DNA of 64,000 bases from Macrostomum lignano (GCA_002269645.1 NIVC01001334.1:1-64000); one strand, 5' to 3'; shown: positions 9,224-61,125, numbered from the stretch's first letter. Notes: a model not told the origin generated them from the sequence alone. Numbers and translations are program-made.

Positions 9224-29110
<19,887 letters not shown>

Positions 29111-30249: not shown

Positions 30250-31040
30250 TCACGATGTCAAGGCTCACGAGGGGACACTGCTGAGATGTCAATGCTCACG
30301 AGGGGACATTGCTGAGATGTCAAGGCTCACGGGGGACACTGCTGAGATATCAAGGCTCACAGGGGGAATTTCTGAGATGTCAAGACTGACGGGGGGAATT
30401 GCTGAAATTTCAAGACGGACGGGGGGCATTGCTGAGATGTCAAGGCTCACAGGGGGATTGTTGAGATGTCAAGGCTCACAGGGGGATTGTTGAGATGTCA
30501 AGGCTCACAGGGGGAATTTCTGAGATGTCAAGACTGACGGGGGACATTGCTGAGATGTCAAGGCTCACAGGGGGAATTTCTGAGATGTCAAGGCTCACAG
30601 GGGGAATTTCTGAGATGTCAAGACTGACGGGGGGAATTGCTGAAATTTCAAGACTGACGGGGGGCATTGCTGAGATGTCAAGGCTCACAGGGGGATTGTT
30701 GAGATGTCAAGGCTCACAGGGGGATTGTTGAGATGTCAAGGCTCACAGGGGGATTGTTGAGATGTCAAGGCTCACAGGGGGAATTTCTGAGATCTCAAGG
30801 CTCACGGGGGACATTGCTGAGATGTCAAGGCTCACAGGGGGAATTTCTGAGATGTCAAGGCTCACAGGGGGAATTTCTGAGATGTCAAGACTGACGGGGG
30901 GAATTGCTGAGATTTCAAGACTGACGGGGGGCATTGCTGAGATGTCAAGGCTACCGGGGGGATTGCTGAGATTTCAAGGCTTACGAGGGGAATCGCTGAG
31001 ACGTCAAGGGTTACGGGGGAATTGCTGAGATGTCAAGACT
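30250..31040. repeat. 30-bp minisatellite (CTGAGATGTCAAGGCTCACAGGGGGAATTT)n
   Basis: About 25 degenerate tandem units. Confidence 0.96.
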
Positions 31041-31544
31041 GAGAGGTCAGAAACTAAATGTAGTTTATTAAAAAAATGTATTCCATTCTTTGTTGGCTCC
31101 CAGAAACTTTTCCTCAGATCTCACGAGTGACGCAATTTACACTACGGCCGCGGTTCTCGTTTCAACTGTGTGGGTGATGCAGTTTGCGTCCCAAGGCCCC
31201 AGGCGAGGAGAGAGTGGAGAGTGGCTCTCTTTTGTACTCATGAAACGGTGACGCTCAATCCAAGCACAACCCCGCCAGTTTTTATATCAAGCGTACAGTT
31301 TAAAGGAGAAGGTGGGTGTCGTATTCAATTCAGTCAATAAATTTGATAACTCCAGCTAAATCTATTATTGATTTAGATTTGTAGAGCTCTGTAGAGGCAG
31401 AGGTCACGTGACTTCATGCAATTGGCTCACCGCGACTCATACGCTTGTAAAAGTGTGTGGCTATTAAATAAGGCTTCTTATTTCCATCATCTCAACTTAA
31501 GAGTTATTGACGGAGCGCCATACTTGTTGCAGCTGCTAGCAGGC

Positions 31545-32765
31545 ATGACTGGAACCGACCGCTGCCCAATCGTGTTTGACACCGGTTCGAGGGAGTGCAG
31601 ATTCGGATTAGGTGGAATGAAGCACGATAAACCTCGTTATTTCTACTCGATGGCTCCTAGACGAACCGATCAAAAGGTACAAAAGCGATGAAACTGAGAG
31701 TTTAATTTAGTTCTCATGTATAACTTTTCTTCAACTGACTTCAATTCATTCCAGGACGCTGTTGTTGACCAGAACGACAATTACATCAGTTCAAATGTAC
31801 ACAAGAAGCAGAGCGACCTCCCACTGGTGAGCCCGATCGAGCGCGGCGTTGTGATCAATTGGGACGACATGGAGAAGATCTGGCACCATGCGTTTTACGA
31901 CAAGCTCTCCGTGGCCCCAGAGGAGCACCCGGTGGTCCTGACGGAGCCGCCGCTCAATCCGAAAGCCAACCGCGAGACAATGGCGCAGGTCATGTTCGAG
32001 ACCTTCAACGTCCCATCGATTTACATTGGCTTGTCGCCCATAATGGCACTGTATGCAAATTGCCTTTGGACCGGTATCGTACTGGAGTCCGGCGACGGCA
32101 TCTCAACGGCCATGCACGTCTACGACAACGAGATACTCCCAAATACGACTTTTCGACTGGACCTGGCAGGCCGCGACCTCACCGACAACCTGGCGCAGAT
32201 GCTAAATGAGCGCGGCTACAGCTTCACCAGCACCGCCGAGCACAAGATCGTCCGCGACATCAAGGAGAAGCTGTGCTACGTCGCCATGGACTTCGAAAAA
32301 GAGATGCAGACAGCCGCCAGCAGCAGATCCCTGAAGAAGAGCTACAAGCTGCCCGACGGTCGGGTGATCACCATCGGCAACGAGCGCTTCCGGTGCGCCG
32401 AGACCCTGTTCCAGCCGTCTTCTTTTAAAATGGGGAAGTCAGGAATCCAGCAGATTCTAATAAGTAGCATTCTGACCGCTGACGAGGGAGTAAGGGACAC
32501 CCAATTCCAGCAAACCATCGTGCTAACCGGAGGCTCAATGCGTTTCAAGGGTACAAAGCAACGCCTACAGAAAGAGCTCGCCTACCTGGCGCCACCCAAC
32601 TTAAGATTCAACATTTTGGCCCCAACGCAGCCCAACTTCGACGTCTGGTTCGGAGCCTCCAAGTTGCCAATTATAAGCTTTGGTAAGCCATTGCGCATCT
32701 CCAAGACAGATTATGAAGAGTCTGGCCCAACCGTTGCGCACATCGGAGCGATAGCGGAACATTAA
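31545..32765 (+). CDS. Divergent actin / actin-like protein, 380 aa, two exons
   Basis: Exon 1 is 31545-31676 (MTGTDRCPIVFDTGSRECRFG...DQK), followed by a 78-nt GT-AG phase-0 intron and exon 2 at 31755-32765. Near-actin segments include NWDDMEKIWHH, APEEHPVVLTEPPLNPKANRE, DLAGRDLTD, RDIKEKLCYVA and LPDGRVITIGNERFRCAE. Confidence 0.95.
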
Positions 32766-34096
32766 TTTCCTTTATTTAAGTCTATTTCATGCAGTTACGA
32801 CGCGTTACCATAAGAGCCGATTGCAATACGGCTACAGGAACAACAATTTGAAGCAATTAACTTAAGCATATAAAGATTTTCTTTGATTTTAGTCCCCAAC
32901 GGTTGACTGCCATGTTCGTTCTTTAAAAATTTGGTGCACGTTCGTAGTACTTTTGCCGATTTTTATTGATCTCATCAAATAGATTTTATACCAAATTCTT
33001 ATGATATTTTTCGATCATTTTAATTAGTTTTTAGCCCTCTATGCTAATTTTCTTTCAAGCCAGACGCCTCGTACGTTGCAATTAGTAAATTTTGAGCAAA
33101 AAAGTATTTAATGCAGATAAAACTCGAACCATCAGTAGCTCGCAGTTGGCAAGTACGGTTGTAACTTGTGGGGTCGTATTTATTCCTAGAAATTTCTGTA
33201 CATAAAGTGTTATCATACGTACATTACGAGTGTATGTAAGCCACCTATATACTCACCGTATACTAAATCTCTCAGATCTTCATAGTTCTTAACCAGCGGA
33301 TTATGTGTGCATGAAGCTGTCAATTAATCTAACGTATAAGTTTGTGTTGGCGATTTTGCACGATTTTTCCTGATTTAATTATGAGTTGGAACTACTTGAG
33401 ACGTATCTCCTTTAATTACATGTATTACAACTTAAAAAACACATTAAGCATAGTCGATTCTTAGTATAAGTAGGTTTCAACGGCAATAAAACTAGATATA
33501 TTCTATTAGGAATAAATTATACACAAGTACGAGCGTGCAGGTGTACTAAAAGTCCCAAGTCGTCCTTGAATAAAGTCATGATACATTAAAATATTTTCAT
33601 GTTTCTTTACGGTGTGGTAAGTACAAAAAATACAAGCAGATATCAATTAGTCAGGATTTTAGTCTGGAACAATATCGTTTCGGCTTGGAGGCGAGTCATA
33701 TATGGGCCATGCCATCAAAGGTGATAATTAATACATTATAGGTAAGCGACCGTATGTTGTACATATAGCGACAACAGCTGAGGGAACATCTTGTTGCTAC
33801 GTGGATGCAAAAATATATTGTATTTTCGATCTGCACTTTACTACCACACGCCCTGTATACATACGAGCGTACGTCAAAAATTAGGGTTAAACATTTTAAT
33901 GCATCACAAGGAAAGTTTTCTTATGTTTGTCCGTCATTACATAATCCACATGCCTAAGCTCCTAAAAGATTACCGCAAAAAACTATGAATTTATTATTCT
34001 AAAAAATCTTTTTCTCGAATTTTTTAGCTATATACTTGCGGCTGTATCCATTCATTTGTTTAACTAGATGTACGCGGAAAAGTTTTTAAAAAGGAC

Positions 34097-45005: not shown

Positions 45006-48000
45006 ATGCGCCTTCACTGGCTATCGCTGTTGCGGCTATTGCAGCTTCTGGAATTGTTGTCAAACTTATCGGCGGCGACGAGGCTGCGCTTTGCTACTGG
45101 TGGCAGCTATCGTGGCCTTCTTGTTCTCGGTCGTCGAATGCCTGTGCTAGTTCGCGGTCCGCCAATCGCTTTGATCATCGTCAACAAAGACTACAACAAA
45201 GTTCAGGACAAAGACGTTTTCAATATCGGCGTCAACTATCGCATAGCTGATGCTCGTCTCGCTCAGTGGCTGACGGTGGCGGAAGCCGGGCCGCGAATTG
45301 ATGGCCACGCCTTCCTGGAGGTCCGAGCGACCGGTCAGCACAACCTGGACAAAAACTTTGCCAGAGTAGACGGCAACTGGTTGACGGTGCCGATCCTGGC
45401 AACAACCGCGACTGCTACTGCTCGATGCCGGCTGACGATTCGCCTGCTGCCGCGTCGGCCGCTCTGCCCCCGCTTCGGCGCCGTTTCGTACGCCTTCACT
45501 GCGCCGGCGCCAGACCTGCGTAGGCGCCTCGCCGTGGTCGGCCGGCTGAGCACGGCGCCAACGACTTCGGAAACTTCCAGTAGAGGAGGCGTGAAACCGG
45601 CCTTTACTCTTGTGGCCTCCAACAATGCCGCGGCATCGGGTGACTTCGACGTCGAATCGACTAGCGGTGCGGTGCTGATGCTGAACCCGGCGCCTCGGCC
45701 GGGGCTACACCGCCTGCGGGTTCGAGTCCATGGGGTTGGCGGCGACGCTCCGTGCGGTTACAGCAATGACGGCAGCATCTCAGAGACGGGATTCTTCTCC
45801 GAGGCCGACGTGACCATCGTTGTGGCCGAGCCGTCGAGCGTGGACTCGGACGGGGCGGCGATCCTGACCGCGGCTGTCACCCTGGGCGTGGTCCGGCCGC
45901 CGCTGGTGACCAGCTGGAGCCGCGCCGGCGCCACCTACGCGCTGGTGCGCCCGGAGGGCGGCGGACTGATGGTGGGTCTCGGGTCTCGGTTTTGACCTTG
46001 GCCTCATTGCATCTTGGCGGTCCTTGGCCTTCTTCATTGTCCCTTTTTGTCATTGACTTTTATTAGTTTTTTTATTAAAATTGACTTTTTTACACGTAGG
46101 TCTTTGTTGCCTCTCAAGCCCTTAATCGCAGCATTGAGCAGGTCTCTTTGGGCAACCCTTGTCAACCCACAGACCGCAGCGCCGGGCAGAATTGATTTGC
46201 AACTGGTTGACGATTATCAGGGCACCTTCCAGTTGGTGCCGCCGCAGCAGGCATCGGAGTCGGCCGGATATCACCAGCTGCAGCTGGCTCGAAACCTTCA
46301 GACAGCCGACCTGGGCCGGACTTTCGACGTGCGTATCGCAATCTCAAACGTGTCCGTCGAATCCGTACTCATTGACCCGTCCGATCGACGGCTGCTGAGC
46401 GCCGATATCCGGAACCGGAACTTTCGGCTGACTGTGCAGGAGTGCACGCCGGTTGGCGCGCTGCTGTACCGCTTCCGGCCGAGCTTCTACGATGAGGCGT
46501 TGGCCGCCGAAGAGGCTGCGACCGGCCGCGGCGGCGTCGAGAGGCTTCGGCGGCTGCTGATGGGCCCCGAGTCACGATTCGAGTTTATCGAGTGGCAGTC
46601 TAGCAAGCAGCTGAGACTCGAAAGGGGCAGCGGAGCCGTCACTATTAGGTAAGGCTCACTCATAGCTCACTCATGATCTCACTCATGACCTCACTCATGA
46701 ACTCCCTCACTCATGAACTCCCTCACTCATGAACTCCCTCACTCATGAACTCCCTCACTCATGAACTTGCTCATGAACTCACTCATGAACTCATGAACTC
46801 ATGAACTCACAAATTCCACAGATCTCCAATGGACGCCGAATCCACCGCCGGGCGCGAGCAACGCCTCATCGCTCGCATCCGCGACCTGTCCGCGCCAAGT
46901 CATGTGACCTTCCACACTCTGCTAGTCAGCGTGTCCGACTGCAACGAGTTTGCACCGTCTTTGGTTGGCGGCCAGACAGTCAGCGTCAGCTTGCCCGAGT
47001 CCGCGCCGGTTGGTCGCCTGGTCGCGACGCTGAATCTTACCGATGACGATGCTGACGCTGACAAAGACGGCGAGGCCGCGGCTACGCTGGTTGCCATGTC
47101 AATGGACAGTTCCGCTTTGTCCCCCTTTCACCTGGACGAAAGCGGCCGGCGGCTGCTACTGGCCCGACCTCTCGATTTGGAGACGCAGTCGGGGTCGTAC
47201 AGCGTCCGGCTGCGCCTCACCGACCGGGGTCGCCCGTTTCCCCGAGTTTCCATGGCAACCGTTAGCGTCACCGTGCTACCGGTGAACGAGTTCGCGCCGG
47301 AATTCGAGCACGCCGTCTGCCGTTTCGACGTCGACTTTTTCGGCAGCCGCAACCGCCGGCTCTTCTCTACCGGACCGCTGGAAGCCGTCGACTTGGACGA
47401 GCCGCCCGAGCCCGTTTCCTACCTGTTGCTGGGCGCTCCTAGCTGCGCCGAGGTTGCCATAGCGACCGGTAATGTCACGCTAAATCTCGACTGTCTGCGC
47501 CAACATAACTTAAGCCGCCTGTCGCTCCTGATGGTTGCTAAGGACGCTGATGGTCGAGTTTCGCCTTATCCGCTGTCGCTCGAATTCAACTCTGCTTCAG
47601 CGTCGCCATGGCAACAGAAGCGACACAAGCGCTGTGACAAGCCGGCGTCGGGACGAAGTCGGCGACCAGCGGCCGTCGCCGCTGCTAATCGCCGCGCCCG
47701 TGACGACCATCGGCGAAGACTCGCCGACGCCGTCTCCTCGAACGCCGCCGTCAAGTCGCTGCCGAATCGACCGCCCGTCATCTTTTGGAGCGTCGCCGAC
47801 GGCGATGTTCGATCGACGCGCGTCATCGCGCTACCTGAAGACGCCGACGCTGGCACCGTCGTCGCCGACTTCCCGGTAGACGATCCTGACGATGCCGACT
47901 GGTACAACGGCCACCTACCGGCCTTCGCTGCCACGGTGGCTCTGAGCTCGGACTCTAACGAATCCCAAAATTCTTACGATTTTGCCTTCAACGCCAGCGT

Positions 48001-50509
48001 CAAGGAGCTCTGCGGCGACGACCACGACGACGACGACAGCGAGAGCCGCGCCAGGCGATTCTTCAGCCGCTGCCGCCGCCGAGTCCTCCGGCTGGTGGTG
48101 GCCGAGCCGCTGCTGCTGGACAGGGAGCGCCGTCCGAGCTACGGCCTGAAGCTAAAAGTCTGCGACGCCGGCTCCCCGCCGCTCTGCTCCAGCATCGACG
48201 TTGGCGTCCAGCTTGCCGATGTTAACGACAACCGGCCGGCGTTCCTGTCACCGACGTCCAACCTGACGGTGAGCTCAGCGCCGACACTGGGCGTGACGCT
48301 GCACCGGTTCGCCGCCGTCGACCCCGACCTCGGCGACAACGGGACGGTTCGGTTTCGCCTCCTGCTTCCAGACGCTCCCGAGGCGGCTCTGTTCAGCCTG
48401 GACGCCGTCAGCGGTGAGCTGCGCTTCGCCGATAACGCCACCGAAATTTCTGACGGCTTAGGTCGCGATTTCGAGCTGGAGATTCAAGCATTCGACCTTG
48501 GCCGACCGTCGCTGACGTCGAGTCTTCGAGTTCGCGTCGATTTCAACATTCGGCCAGATGATCGGCGGCGCCTGAAGTTCGTCACTGGAGATGTGGACCA
48601 GCCGGGCAAGCTGAGCCTCCGACTGAACGAGATGACGCCTCCGGGGCTCTGCTGGCCAACCTGCTGGCTGTTGGTTTCCATAGCAACCGGCCACCAGCGG
48701 GCGGAGTGGCCTACTCGCTCTCGGGCCTGCCAGCGGTGGTCGGACAGTTCAGCCTGGACCGGCGCACCGGCTGCCTCAGCCTCGGCCGTCGGCACCGACT
48801 GTCGGCTTCGACGTCGCCGTATCGATTGTTCGCCGTAGCCGAAGCGCTGGTCAACGATGAGGAGGACAAGAAAATTCGCGCCGAACTGTTCATCATTGTG
48901 GACGTCGTGGCGGCGCCGAATCTAACGTCCGTGGTTCGATTCCGCTGGCCAGCAATCGCCCTGAATGCGGCCGAGTCGCTGCCGGTTGGCTCCCTGATTG
49001 GCCGGCCGCCTGAGCTTCGAGTTTGGCGAGACGGCAACGACAAGGAGGCTGCGGCCGACACAGGCGAGCTCGGAAATGTTCGCTACGAAATTCTGCACGA
49101 TGATGGAGGCTGGTTTGCTATTGATAGCGATGGTGAGTCCTGCTGGTTCTGCCGGGACTGCCGGGCTAATGGGGTTGGGGTGAGACTCTAGTGAGATTGG
49201 AGTGAGATTTGTGAGGGAGATTGGGGTAAGATTTGTTAGTGAGATTAGGTTGAGATTTTTTAGTGAGATTGAGGTGACATTGTGAGTGAGATTGGGGTAA
49301 GATTTGTTAGTGAGATTAGGTTGAGATTTGTGAGTGAGATTTGGGTGAGATTTGTGAGTGAGATTAGGGTGAGATTTGTGAGTGAGATTTGTGAGTGAGA
49401 TTTAGGTGAGATTTTTGAGTGAGATTTGGGTGAGATTTGTGAGTGAGATTTGGGTGAGATTTGTGAGTGAGATTTGGGTGAGATTTGTGAGTGAGATTAG
49501 GGTGTGATTTGTGAGTGAGATTTGGGTGAGATTTGTGAGTGAGATTGGGGTGAGATTTGTGAGTGAGATTTAGGTGAGATTTGTGAGTGAGATTTGGCTG
49601 AAAGATCTGCATGGGCATCAAGGAACCGGGCCTCAGTGCGATTGCATAATATCCTGGTATTTCTCAGATTTGGAGTGATTCAGCAAAAGAATCGCCCAGG
49701 CAAAAGAGGCGACTTTAAACAAATCAAAGTCAACCAGTCCGGGATGTCGGTTCCGCCATTCAGTGACCTGCTGTGACTTTTTCACCAAAACCCCTAAAAA
49801 ACATGCTGTTTGAAAAAATTTCTCATCTCTGCGATCAACTTTGCGGGCTTCAGTTTCTCTTTTTTTTGTTTGAGTTCTCTGAGGCTGGACTGGGGCGGAT
49901 TTTTGAGCAGAGATGCCGAGAAGGTTACGTCAGTGAGATCCGGGTCTCCCATCCAGAATTGAAAGGGAGAGGGAGGGTCAGTCGTGGTAAGATCTCAGAG
50001 TAATTTTTCTTTATACTCCAGAGCAGCGGCAGTGAGGGAGGGTCAGCTTTTCAATGAGTTTTTTTCGGGTCTGAATGGGAAATTGAGATCCTCCCCACGT
50101 CCCGGGCTTCATCCCTTGCATTTTTCAGTGTCCTGGACTTCAAGTTCTGAGTTTGACTGACGGGAGATGGAAATCGAAGGGAAGTGAAAGAAGGACTAGA
50201 GGACTGATGAGAGTTGGGGAAGGCGGCGGTCAATTCTAAGGAGCTCCAGAAGGGATGACGCAATGCATTTTATAGTAAAATAGTAAATTAAACTTTATCT
50301 CCGGGGCCGTGACATCGTGAAGGAAGGGTATAATTGATATTGAGTGTGCCGGCTTGGAGATCAGGTTGACGTTGGCATGGATGGTTGGGCCAGCTTCGAA
50401 GGTACACAGAGAGTGTGCATGCCAAACCTCTTCCTTGTGAACCCCTAATTGTAGAATCCCTTTCCACCAAATCCTCAAAATCCTATTTTCCTCAGCCGCC
50501 TTCCAGAAC

Positions 50510-59669: not shown

Positions 59670-61125
<1,456 letters not shown>

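What the first reader, a model, noticed from the sequence alone, without database searches (positions are those of the whole stretch)
31545..32765. Actin with intact core segments but substituted ATPase and regulatory residues
Seen, using conventional actin numbering from a by-eye alignment: Q137 to S (YIGLSPIM), H161 to T and D154 to E (ESGDGIST), H73 to R (PIERG), phosphate-1 loop DNGSGMCK to DTGSRECR, adenosine motif GGTTMY to GGSMRF, a replaced D-loop, and a C-terminus HIGAIAEH instead of RKCF. The ORF is full length and keeps a phase-0 intron at the classic codon-41/42 position. Established: Q137 and H161 position the catalytic water, H73 is the SETD3 methylation site, and the D-loop and C-terminus mediate filament contacts. 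Inference: a hydrolysis-deficient, probably non-polymerising or capping actin paralogue (pseudo-ATPase), perhaps germline- or cilia-specific.
Basis: partly seen in the sequence, partly recalled or inferred. Interest (0 to 1): 0.7.

Follow-up and report, generated by a model that had tools for sequence, protein, structure and literature searches.

The report
Ovary-expressed divergent actin copy in flatworm
This is a real, expressed gene of the flatworm Macrostomum lignano: an old, fast-diverged copy of ordinary actin. It is switched on in the ovary and has lost the residues ordinary actin uses to split ATP. This kind of lineage-specific germline actin-like protein is already known from flies and mammals.

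Summary
Window 31545-32765 (+) carries a two-exon gene for a 380-aa protein with a full-length Pfam Actin match.

- **Source:** the window is the start of contig NIVC01001334.1 of Macrostomum lignano. The gene is BOX15_Mlig026162, which has three genomic copies.
- **Expression:** a published transcript (RNA815_4558) confirms the splice. Published RNA-seq and in situ hybridisation show ovary-specific expression, not testis or cilia.
- **Origin:** it is not Arp1, Arp2 or Arp3 (38, 36 and 29% identity). It shares the single phase-0 intron of this worm's conventional actin genes.
- **Relatives:** no database protein outside M. lignano is closer to it than to beta-actin.
- **Not a pseudogene:** the reading frame is intact despite about 367 nucleotide differences from its parent. 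Non-synonymous sites differ about nine-fold less between homeologous copies than the flanks do.
- **New detail:** the well-kept subdomain 4 segment has unusually low synonymous divergence from conventional actin, which points to gene conversion.
- **Context:** 14 of 45 comparably divergent actin-like proteins also lack both Q137 and H161.

Impaired ATP hydrolysis and non-canonical assembly are plausible but untested. Verdict: a new member of a known kind, of moderate to low interest.

The parts
31368..31544 (+). 5' untranslated region as assembled in transcript RNA815_4558. It contains an in-frame upstream ATG at 31416, which NCBI models g1/g3 use (423 aa), and a possible splice acceptor (ttgttgcag) ending at 31531.
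   Evidence: The first 399 nt of the transcript map exactly to 31368-31676 plus 31755-31843. The upstream extension is interrupted by stop codons in the g2 copy.
31545..31676 (+). Exon 1, 44 codons: non-acidic N-terminus, altered phosphate-1 loop (DTGSRECR) and the first half of the replaced D-loop.
   Evidence: There are 0 differences among the three genomic copies.
31677..31754 (+). Single intron: 78 nt, GT..AG, phase 0, at or within one codon of actin codon 41/42.
   Evidence: It is removed in transcript RNA815_4558. Conventional M. lignano actin genes have their only intron at CAG(Q41)|GTAAGA.
31755..32765 (+). Exon 2, 336 codons plus a TAA stop: H73R, Q137S, D154E, H161T, GGSMRF, K336N, and a C-terminus HIGAIAEH.
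32163..32417 (+). Codons 181-265, roughly actin subdomain 4: 89% nucleotide identity to M. lignano conventional actin. Putative gene-conversion tract; the boundaries are approximate.
   Evidence: dS is 0.25 here against 0.8-1.5 elsewhere. 59 of 68 same-amino-acid codons are identical, against 48 expected under actin's own codon bias (p = 0.0004). GC3 is 0.91 here and 0.58-0.82 in the other segments, 0.59-0.67 in the two that flank it.
32766..33561 (+). 3' untranslated region. Its end is inferred from the stated transcript length of 2117 nt, assuming no further intron.
   Evidence: The primers of the in situ probe map to 32320-32339 and 32824-32843, giving a 524-bp product as published. The end was calculated. 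Only the first 399 nt of the transcript were available.

Best explanation
**Shown.**
- This is a functional, protein-coding, lineage-restricted 'orphan' actin-like gene of Macrostomum lignano, BOX15_Mlig026162, with three near-identical genomic copies.
- It is transcribed specifically in the ovary, in growing oocytes.
- It keeps an open reading frame and changes much less between homeologous copies than the adjacent non-coding DNA does.

**Inferred about its origin.**
- It arose by DNA-level duplication of the worm's single-intron conventional actin gene.
- It then diverged strongly in the N-terminus, subdomain 2 (D-loop), subdomain 3, the nucleotide-cleft loops and the C-terminus.
- The helix-rich part of subdomain 1 (actin residues 74-134) stayed under purifying selection.
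- Subdomain 4 was later re-homogenised with conventional actin by gene conversion.

**Inferred about its mechanism.**
- The protein keeps the actin fold and probably still binds a nucleotide. D11, G13, S14, G156, D157, G158, G182, R210, K213, E214 and G301-G302 are retained.
- It has lost the water-activating residues Q137 and H161 and has altered D154 and G15. ATP hydrolysis is therefore likely slow or absent.
- Both partners of the main longitudinal filament contact are replaced: the D-loop, and the barbed-end cleft with the C-terminus. It is therefore unlikely to behave as a normal F-actin subunit.
- It most likely acts in oocytes as a non-canonical actin. It could be a monomeric or complex-bound factor, or a subunit that co-assembles with conventional actin through its conventional subdomain 4 face and changes filament-end behaviour.
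For: **Identity and model.**
- Gene model and translation.
- Pfam Actin at 305 bits.
- 53% identity to actin over the full length with only three small indels.

**Organism and copies.**
- The window equals NIVC01001334.1 positions 1-64000.
- The three copies are P0001, P0121 and P0122.

**Expression.**
- Transcript RNA815_4558 was classed as ovary-region.
- Normalised counts were 85 (head), 126 (plus testis region), 2295 (plus ovary region) and 4125 (whole worm).
- In situ hybridisation stained the ovaries.
- The probe primers map inside this gene.

**Origin from conventional actin.**
- The intron position matches that of the M. lignano actin genes.
- Nucleotide identity to conventional actin is 89% in codons 181-265.
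- Identity is 52.7% to actin against 37.8, 35.8 and 28.8% to Arp1, Arp2 and Arp3. The NJ tree places the gene outside Arp1-3.

**Selection.**
- None of 20,000 simulated neutral sequences stayed stop-free at the observed 367 substitutions.
- Between homeologues, the CDS has 8 differences in 1143 nt and the adjacent flanks 30 in 731 (p = 6e-7).
- Non-synonymous sites have 4 differences in about 870, against 30 in 731 for the flanks (p = 2e-7).
- The segment 75-135 has dN/dS = 0.075 with saturated dS.

**Gene conversion.**

**Residue table.**
Against: - No biochemical property was tested or can be tested here.
- In the divergent segments the pairwise dN/dS against conventional actin is 0.54. Almost all amino-acid change must lie on this gene's branch, so the branch-specific ratio there could approach 1. 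Much of the divergence could therefore be relaxed constraint rather than adaptation.
- Between homeologues the split is 4 non-synonymous to 4 synonymous differences. That alone does not reject neutrality (binomial p = 0.10).
- Synonymous sites and the intron are also less diverged than the flanks. Part of the CDS/flank contrast could therefore come from conversion among copies.
- Non-glycine residues at the position equivalent to G15 occur in other members of the actin/Hsp70 superfamily (own knowledge), so nucleotide binding is not excluded.
- Some divergent actins of protists still polymerise (own knowledge).
- The AlphaFold2 model was of low confidence (pLDDT 47.8) and gives no structural support.
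- No RNAi phenotype was reported for this transcript. It was not included in that screen.
Confidence: 0.55

Rival explanations
1. It is a transcribed but functionless, neutrally decaying actin duplicate (an expressed pseudogene).
For: - Many otherwise invariant actin residues are replaced.
- Pairwise dN/dS is 0.54 in the divergent segments, which could mean about 1 on this branch.
- No orthologue was found elsewhere.
Against: - The 380-codon frame is intact in all three copies, with only three small in-frame indels relative to actin.
- No stop-free sequence appeared in 20,000 neutral simulations at the observed divergence.
- Non-synonymous sites are about nine-fold less diverged between homeologues than the flanks.
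- The segment 75-135 has dN/dS = 0.075.
- Expression is strong and organ-specific.
Confidence: 0.05
2. It is a specialised but still canonical-acting actin isoform. On this view it binds and hydrolyses ATP and forms its own filaments in oocytes, with its interfaces co-evolved, as in some divergent protist actins or Chlamydomonas NAP1.
For: - Full-length actin architecture without large insertions.
- Many nucleotide-contact residues are retained: D11, G13, S14, G156, D157, G158, K213, E214, G301, G302.
- Lateral-contact residues 110-113 and 195 are identical, 5 of 5, and the subdomain 4 contact surfaces are largely kept.
- Both sides of the D-loop/cleft contact have changed, as expected if they co-evolved.
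Against: - Q137 and H161, which position the attacking water, are both replaced. D154 and G15 are changed as well.
- H73 and the acidic N-terminus are lost.
- The subdomain 3 surface 283-294 (2 of 12 identical) no longer matches its well-kept subdomain 4 partner surfaces.
Confidence: 0.2
3. It belongs to an established Arp subfamily (Arp1 to Arp10, or the vertebrate or fly testis Arps) that already carries these residues.
For: Its overall identity to actin (53%) is in the range of Arp1. The GGS start of the adenosine motif resembles the GGST of Arp1, Arp2 and Arp3.
Against: - Identity is 37.8, 35.8 and 28.8% to Arp1, Arp2 and Arp3, against 52.7% to the worm's own actin. It lies outside Arp1-3 in the NJ tree.
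- Arp1, Arp2 and Arp3 keep DSGDGVTH and Q137, as seen in the sequences used.
- The intron is shared with M. lignano conventional actin genes, and a tract is 89% nucleotide-identical to them.
- None of 268 retrieved homologues is closer to it than to beta-actin.
- The fly and mammalian testis Arps are restricted to their own lineages (PMC7038667, PMC3064208).
Confidence: 0.02

Closest known systems
Non-canonical ('orphan') germline Arps derived from actin or Arps: Drosophila Arp53D and the obscura-group paralogues (Schroeder et al., PMC7038667, PMC8291977); mammalian ACTL7A/B and ACTRT1-3 (PMC3064208)
   Same: - Actin fold.
- Lineage-restricted duplicate of a highly conserved cytoskeletal gene.
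- Strong sequence divergence from the parent.
- Gonad-specific expression.
   Different: - Expression is in the ovary (growing oocytes), not the testis.
- It arose by DNA duplication that kept the parental intron. At least Arp2D in flies is a retrocopy.
- The fly obscura-group paralogues are reported to preserve the ATP-binding and hydrolysis motif, whereas this gene has lost Q137 and H161.
- There is no orthology to any of them. This was not tested by sequence here.
Conventional actin of Macrostomum lignano (P0271; loci L004-L006)
   Same: - Same length class and the same single phase-0 intron.
- 53% identity overall.
- About 85% amino-acid identity in actin residues 74-134 and 180-264.
- 89% nucleotide identity in codons 181-265.
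   Different: - Catalytic residues, P1 and P2 loops, H73, the D-loop, the W-loop, the hydrophobic cleft, the plug, residues 283-294 and both termini are all replaced.
- GC3 is lower, 0.71 against 0.87.
- Expression is restricted to the ovary.
Arp1 (centractin), the canonical Arp most like actin
   Same: - Similar size.
- Similar overall distance from actin.
- Forms or caps short actin-like assemblies (own knowledge), which is the kind of role proposed here.
   Different: - Only 37.8% identical to this protein.
- Arp1 keeps DNGSG, Q137 and DSGDGVTH (sequence).
- Arp1 is ancient and pan-eukaryotic, whereas this gene has no detectable orthologue.

Membership tests
Actin family (Pfam PF00022, actin/Arp fold) | Full-length match to the family profile above the curated threshold | tested here: met
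   305 bits against a cut-off of 27, covering residues 8-373 and profile positions 6-406 of 410. PDB actins match at E about 1e-124.
Conventional actin (polymerising ATPase isoform) | Near-invariant sequence: conventional actins are usually more than about 85% identical to each other | tested here: not met
   50-53% identity to 30 conventional actins in one alignment. 52.7% to the M. lignano actin.
Conventional actin (polymerising ATPase isoform) | Catalytic and phosphate-loop residues G15, Q137, D154 and H161, plus the methylated H73 | tested here: not met
   G15R, Q137S, D154E, H161T and H73R.
Conventional actin (polymerising ATPase isoform) | Conserved D-loop, hydrophobic cleft and C-terminal ...HRKCF, which make the longitudinal filament contact | tested here: not met
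   D-loop 4 of 15 identical, cleft residues 3 of 12, C-terminus HIGAIAEH.
Conventional actin (polymerising ATPase isoform) | ATP hydrolysis and filament formation | not testable with these tools
   This needs purified protein.
Canonical Arps (Arp1, Arp2, Arp3) | Closer to that Arp than to actin, and groups with it in a tree | tested here: not met
   37.8, 35.8 and 28.8% identity against 52.7% to actin. It falls outside Arp1-3 in an NJ tree, though bootstrap support on the backbone is weak. The Arp sequences were checked against PDB entries.
Nuclear Arps (Arp4-Arp8) and Arp10/11 | Groups with that Arp; has the characteristic insertions | not tested
   No reference sequences were compared. Against membership: the protein has no insertions relative to actin and shares an intron and a near-identical nucleotide tract with the worm's own actin.
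Orphan, lineage-specific germline actin-like proteins (a functional class, not a clade) | Restricted to one lineage, with no orthologue elsewhere | tested here: met
   - Only the M. lignano copies were found with the full query and with a query masked for conventional-actin words.
- No closer representative appeared among 1.84 billion.
- None of 268 homologues is closer to it than to beta-actin.
- Limit: proteomes of other Macrostomum species appear not to be in the databases.
Orphan, lineage-specific germline actin-like proteins (a functional class, not a clade) | Gonad-specific expression | tested here: met
   From the literature: an ovary-region RNA-seq class and ovarian in situ signal for RNA815_4558, which corresponds to Mlig026162.g1. 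The probe maps to 32320-32843. The organ is the ovary rather than the testis.
Orphan, lineage-specific germline actin-like proteins (a functional class, not a clade) | Rapid or positively selected evolution | tested here: inconclusive
   dN against the parent is 0.35 overall and 0.56 in the divergent segments. No orthologues or population data were available for a branch or McDonald-Kreitman test.

The most novel reading that the evidence does not exclude
The protein is a female-germline pseudo-ATPase actin that co-assembles with conventional actin through its conventional subdomain 4 face. That face would be kept compatible by recurrent gene conversion. Its remodelled barbed-end face would then block or alter further subunit addition. 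This would make it an oocyte-specific, actin-derived filament-end regulator and the first orphan actin-like protein with an ovarian role.
Probability: 0.12. Interest if true: 0.6.

Novelty: new member of a known kind. Interest (0 to 1): 0.33.

Why it matters
Lineage-specific, germline-restricted actin derivatives are known almost only from the male germline of flies and mammals. An ovary-specific example would widen that pattern to the female germline and to another phylum. It sits in a flatworm in which RNAi and transgenesis are established, so it can be studied experimentally. It would also be a natural experiment on which parts of actin can change once the ATPase and the filament contacts are released from constraint.

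The apparent conversion patch over subdomain 4 carries a caution. 'Conserved core' segments in a divergent paralogue can reflect recent sequence exchange with the parent gene rather than long-term constraint.

The gene itself is already in public databases as an uncharacterised actin. It has also been used, unnamed, as an ovary marker.

Tried and rejected
1. **AlphaFold2.** The run used a 32-sequence alignment and gave mean pLDDT 47.8 and pTM 0.41. That is too poor to interpret, so no Foldseek search was run. A second run was not attempted, because only 48 near-identical conventional actins were eligible for the alignment.
2. **Orthologue searches.** The full-length word-indexed search, the exhaustive representative search and a query masked for every 5-mer shared with conventional actins found nothing outside M. 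lignano. The one extra hit, P0284, is a frameshifted gene model of the same gene from an older assembly.
3. **Expression in other papers.**
   - The identifier Mlig026162 is absent from the main text of all searchable papers.
   - It is also absent from the stored supplements of PMC5816591, PMC8662610 and PMC5730564.
   - The complete transcriptome annotation table of PMC7336406 was not retrievable.
4. **Full transcript sequence.** The stored supplement cuts it at about 400 nt, so the 3' end is only calculated.
5. **The 423-aa NCBI model.** It starts at the upstream ATG 31416. It was rejected as the conserved product because the extension carries stop codons in the g2 copy.
6. **Tandem actin duplicates in the window.** None were found.
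7. **The sigma-70 promoter and terminator scan.** It is irrelevant for a eukaryotic gene and was ignored.

Full report
**What is at the coordinates.**
- The + strand of window 31545-32765 carries a two-exon gene:
  - Exon 1 is 31545-31676 (44 codons).
  - The intron is 31677-31754: 78 nt, GT..AG, phase 0.
  - Exon 2 is 31755-32765 (336 codons plus TAA).
- The 380-aa product matches Pfam Actin over its whole length, at 305 bits against a cut-off of 27.
- Its best matches among solved structures are cytoplasmic and muscle actins, at E about 1e-124 and 53-55% identity.
- No other actin-like sequence lies in the window.

**Organism and copies.**
- The window is 100% identical to NIVC01001334.1 of assembly GCA_002269645.1 over 21416-42765, in the same coordinates, so it is the first 64 kb of that contig.
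- The gene is BOX15_Mlig026162 and has three genomic copies:
  - The copy on NIVC01000249.1 is identical across the gene.
  - The copy on NIVC01002216.1 (g2) differs at 8 of 1221 nucleotides and 4 amino acids.
- Several copies are expected in this recently duplicated genome.

**Start codon.**
- NCBI models for g1 and g3 begin at an in-frame ATG at 31416, giving 423 aa.
- In g2 the same stretch carries three stop codons.
- That stretch is also about 4.5% diverged between copies, whereas exon 1 has no differences.
- ATG 31545 is therefore the conserved start.
- A splice-acceptor-like ttgttgcag ends 14 nt upstream of it. Trans-splicing there would remove the upstream ATG. This is an inference and was not tested.

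In beta-actin numbering:
- P1 loop: DNGSGMCK becomes DTGSRECR.
- H73R, Q137S (YIGLSPIM), D154E and H161T (ESGDGIST) are present.
- GGTTMY becomes GGSMRF, and K336 becomes N.
- The D-loop keeps 4 of 15 residues, and the C-terminus is HIGAIAEH.

- The acidic N-terminus is gone.
- The W-loop keeps 3 of 8 residues and the hydrophobic-cleft residues 3 of 12.
- Residues 283-294 keep 2 of 12, and 322-326 keep 1 of 5.

Retained residues: D11, G13, S14, G156, D157, G158, N111, R177, G182, R183, R210, K213, E214, G301, G302, and lateral-contact residues 110-113 and 195.

Identity is strongly mosaic by subdomain:

| Region | Identity to beta-actin |
|---|---|
| Subdomain 4 | 78% |
| Actin residues 70-144 | 69% |
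| Subdomain 2 | 27% |
| Subdomain 3 | 36% |
| Residues 1-32 | 41% |
| Residues 338-375 | 39% |

**It is transcribed, spliced as predicted, and ovary-specific.**
- A supplementary table of Brand et al. 2020 (PMC7336406) links Mlig026162.g1 to transcript RNA815_4558 of Arbore et al. 2015, with the in situ pattern 'ovaries'.
- The two probe primers map to 32320-32339 (exact) and 32824-32843 (one mismatch). They span 524 bp, the published probe length.
- In Arbore et al. (PMC4490696) the transcript belongs to the ovary-region class [0,+,0].
- Its normalised counts were 85 in heads, 126 with the testis region added, 2295 with the ovary region added, and 4125 in whole worms.
- It is the one class [0,+,0] candidate with specific ovarian staining (their Fig. 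3o). [quoted passage not shown]
- It was not part of the RNAi screen.
- The stored first 399 nt of the transcript map exactly to 31368-31676 and 31755-31843, which confirms the intron.
Nothing points to cilia or testis.

**Origin.**
- The M. lignano conventional actin P0271 is encoded at three loci. Each has a single phase-0 intron exactly between Q41 and G42 (CAG|GTAAGA...ACAG|GGC).
- The intron of the divergent gene lies at the same place within one codon. The D-loop alignment contains indels, so the exact register is ambiguous.
- The gene therefore arose by DNA-level duplication of a conventional actin gene, not by retroposition.
- It is 52.7% identical to the worm's actin. It is only 37.8, 35.8 and 28.8% identical to Arp1, Arp2 and Arp3, whose sequences I verified against PDB entries.
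- In a bootstrapped NJ tree it is an isolated long branch outside Arp1-3, among actins and other orphan actin-likes. Backbone support is weak.

**No sister sequence.**
- The full query found only the M. lignano copies at high identity.
- An exhaustive HMMER scan of 1.84 billion representatives found nothing above about 55% over the full length.
- A query in which every 5-mer shared with conventional actins was masked recovered only the gene itself and a frameshifted older model of it.
- None of 268 retrieved homologues aligns better to this protein than to beta-actin.
- Within database coverage the gene is lineage-restricted. Proteomes of other Macrostomum species seem not to be included, so how far it extends within the genus is unknown.

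**Is it under selection?**
- Against conventional actin, dS is about 0.8-1.5 outside one tract, so the duplication is old.
- At the observed 367 nucleotide differences, none of 20,000 neutral simulations stayed free of stop codons. Relative to actin the gene has only three small in-frame indels.
- Codons 75-135 have dN/dS = 0.075 with saturated dS, which is classic purifying selection.
- Between homeologues (window copy against g2), the adjacent flanks differ at 30 of 731 aligned bases (about 4%). The CDS differs at 8 of 1143 (p = 6e-7).
- Non-synonymous sites differ at about 4 of 870 (p = 2e-7 against the flanks). Synonymous sites differ at 4 of 270 (p = 0.05).

Caveats:
- The 4:4 split alone does not reject neutrality (p = 0.10).
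- The low synonymous and intron divergence leaves room for conversion among copies.
- In the divergent segments the pairwise dN/dS is 0.54. Conventional actin hardly changes, so this may mean a ratio near 1 on this branch.
- Much of the divergence could therefore be relaxed constraint or an early adaptive burst. Without orthologues the two cannot be separated.

**A conversion patch.**
- Codons 181-265 (subdomain 4; window about 32163-32417) are 89% identical in nucleotides to conventional actin.
- Their dS is 0.25, against 1.49 for the equally well conserved codons 75-135.
- Of 68 same-amino-acid degenerate codons, 59 are identical. Only 48 are expected even if the gene drew its codons from actin's own strongly biased usage (p = 0.0004). 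All other segments are at or below expectation.
- GC3 in the tract is 0.91, like actin. It is 0.67 and 0.59 in the two segments that flank the tract, and 0.58-0.82 across all other segments.
- The simplest reading is gene conversion from a conventional actin gene after the original divergence.
- Part of the 'intact core' is therefore recent import rather than old conservation. Arguments from conservation of subdomain 4 are weakened accordingly.
- This is an inference. I compared only one conventional actin family and did not identify the donor.

**How unusual is the residue pattern?**
- I looked at 45 representatives that are less than 60% identical to beta-actin and align over at least 330 residues.
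- Of these, 21 lack Q137, 24 lack H161, 14 lack both, 15 lack D154 and 21 lack G15.
- In the wider set of 110 representatives that align over at least 330 residues, the same replacements recur: R at 73 in 17, S at 137 in 8 and T at 161 in 6.
- Loss of the hydrolytic residues is thus a recurrent outcome in orphan actin-like proteins, not a singular feature.
- By contrast, the testis-specific Arp paralogues of the Drosophila obscura group are reported to keep the ATP-binding and hydrolysis motif (PMC7038667).

**Mechanism (inferred).**
- From established actin biochemistry (own knowledge), Q137 and H161 position the attacking water, D154 and D11 help hold the cation, and the backbone of S14-G15-M16 binds the phosphates.
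- With S137, T161, E154 and R15, hydrolysis is probably slow or absent. Nucleotide binding may persist, because most ribose, adenine and phosphate-2 glycine contacts remain.
- Both sides of the D-loop/cleft contact are replaced, as are the subdomain 3 surface and the C-terminus. Ordinary incorporation into F-actin is therefore unlikely.
- A conventional subdomain 4 face combined with a remodelled barbed-end face would fit docking onto a conventional filament end and blocking further growth. This is speculation, and the conversion finding removes the conservation argument for it.
- An AlphaFold2 attempt was uninformative (pLDDT 47.8).

**Comparison and verdict.**
- The closest known kind is the class of non-canonical, lineage-specific, gonad-expressed actin-like proteins. 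Examples are Drosophila Arp53D and the obscura-group paralogues, and mammalian ACTL7A/B and ACTRT1-3 (PMC7038667, PMC8291977, PMC3064208).
- This gene shares their logic but differs in three ways: ovarian expression, retention of the parental intron, and loss of the catalytic residues. It is not orthologous to them.
- It is a member of the actin family by profile. It fails the defining features of a conventional actin and of Arp1-3.
- I rate it a new member of a known kind. The gene is already deposited as an uncharacterised 'Actin' and has been used, unnamed, as an ovary marker.
- Interest is moderate to low. It would rise if the capping or pseudo-ATPase role in oocytes were shown.

Noticed in passing
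window 30254-31037: A 30-nt tandem repeat of about 26 copies, with a higher-order period of 267 nt, lies 330 nt upstream of the transcript start. It reads as an open frame (MSRLTGGISE repeats). Its copy number differs between the three homeologous loci.
   Followed up: partly
window, whole length (e.g. 12781-14092, 14402-15283, 17142-17875, 18419-19237, 19467-20363, 59671-60663): The window is packed with micro- and minisatellite arrays: 45 TRF rows score above 300. Many of the long mechanical ORFs simply run through these repeats and gave no Pfam match.
   Followed up: partly
window 18858-23634 and 23634-28377: A segmental tandem duplication of about 4.8 kb, about 99% identical. It contains AGTT and GATGG-type repeat arrays. 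It showed up as off-diagonal BLAST matches and as duplicated TRF rows.
   Followed up: no
window 11693-12439 and 18120-19403 (+): ORF fragments with Pfam Voltage_CLC matches. The 18120-19403 match is strong (E 4e-18). The 11693-12439 match is weak (E 2e-5, 24.2 bits, just under the 24.8-bit curated cut-off). They are probably exons of a chloride-channel gene upstream of the actin-like gene.
   Followed up: no
window 46829-48838 (+): A 669-aa ORF with two cadherin domains (E 2e-24), probably a large exon of a cadherin-family gene downstream.
   Followed up: no
window 32233-32242 compared with L001: Three of the four amino-acid differences between the homeologous copies cluster in four codons (STAEH against SNTER, actin positions 202-206). 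Each copy matches conventional actin at different positions. This could be a multi-nucleotide event or a micro-conversion.
   Followed up: no
protein P0284 (UniProt A0A1I8F5N6, M. lignano): A 251-aa model named 'DUF3327 domain-containing protein' is a repeatedly frameshifted reading of this same gene. It probably comes from the older, error-prone assembly. The name is misleading.
   Followed up: partly
Arbore et al. 2015, Additional file 4: The published annotation table lists no BLAST hit for RNA815_4558, although the transcript encodes an obvious actin-family protein. This may be why the ovary marker was never recognised as an actin.
   Followed up: no
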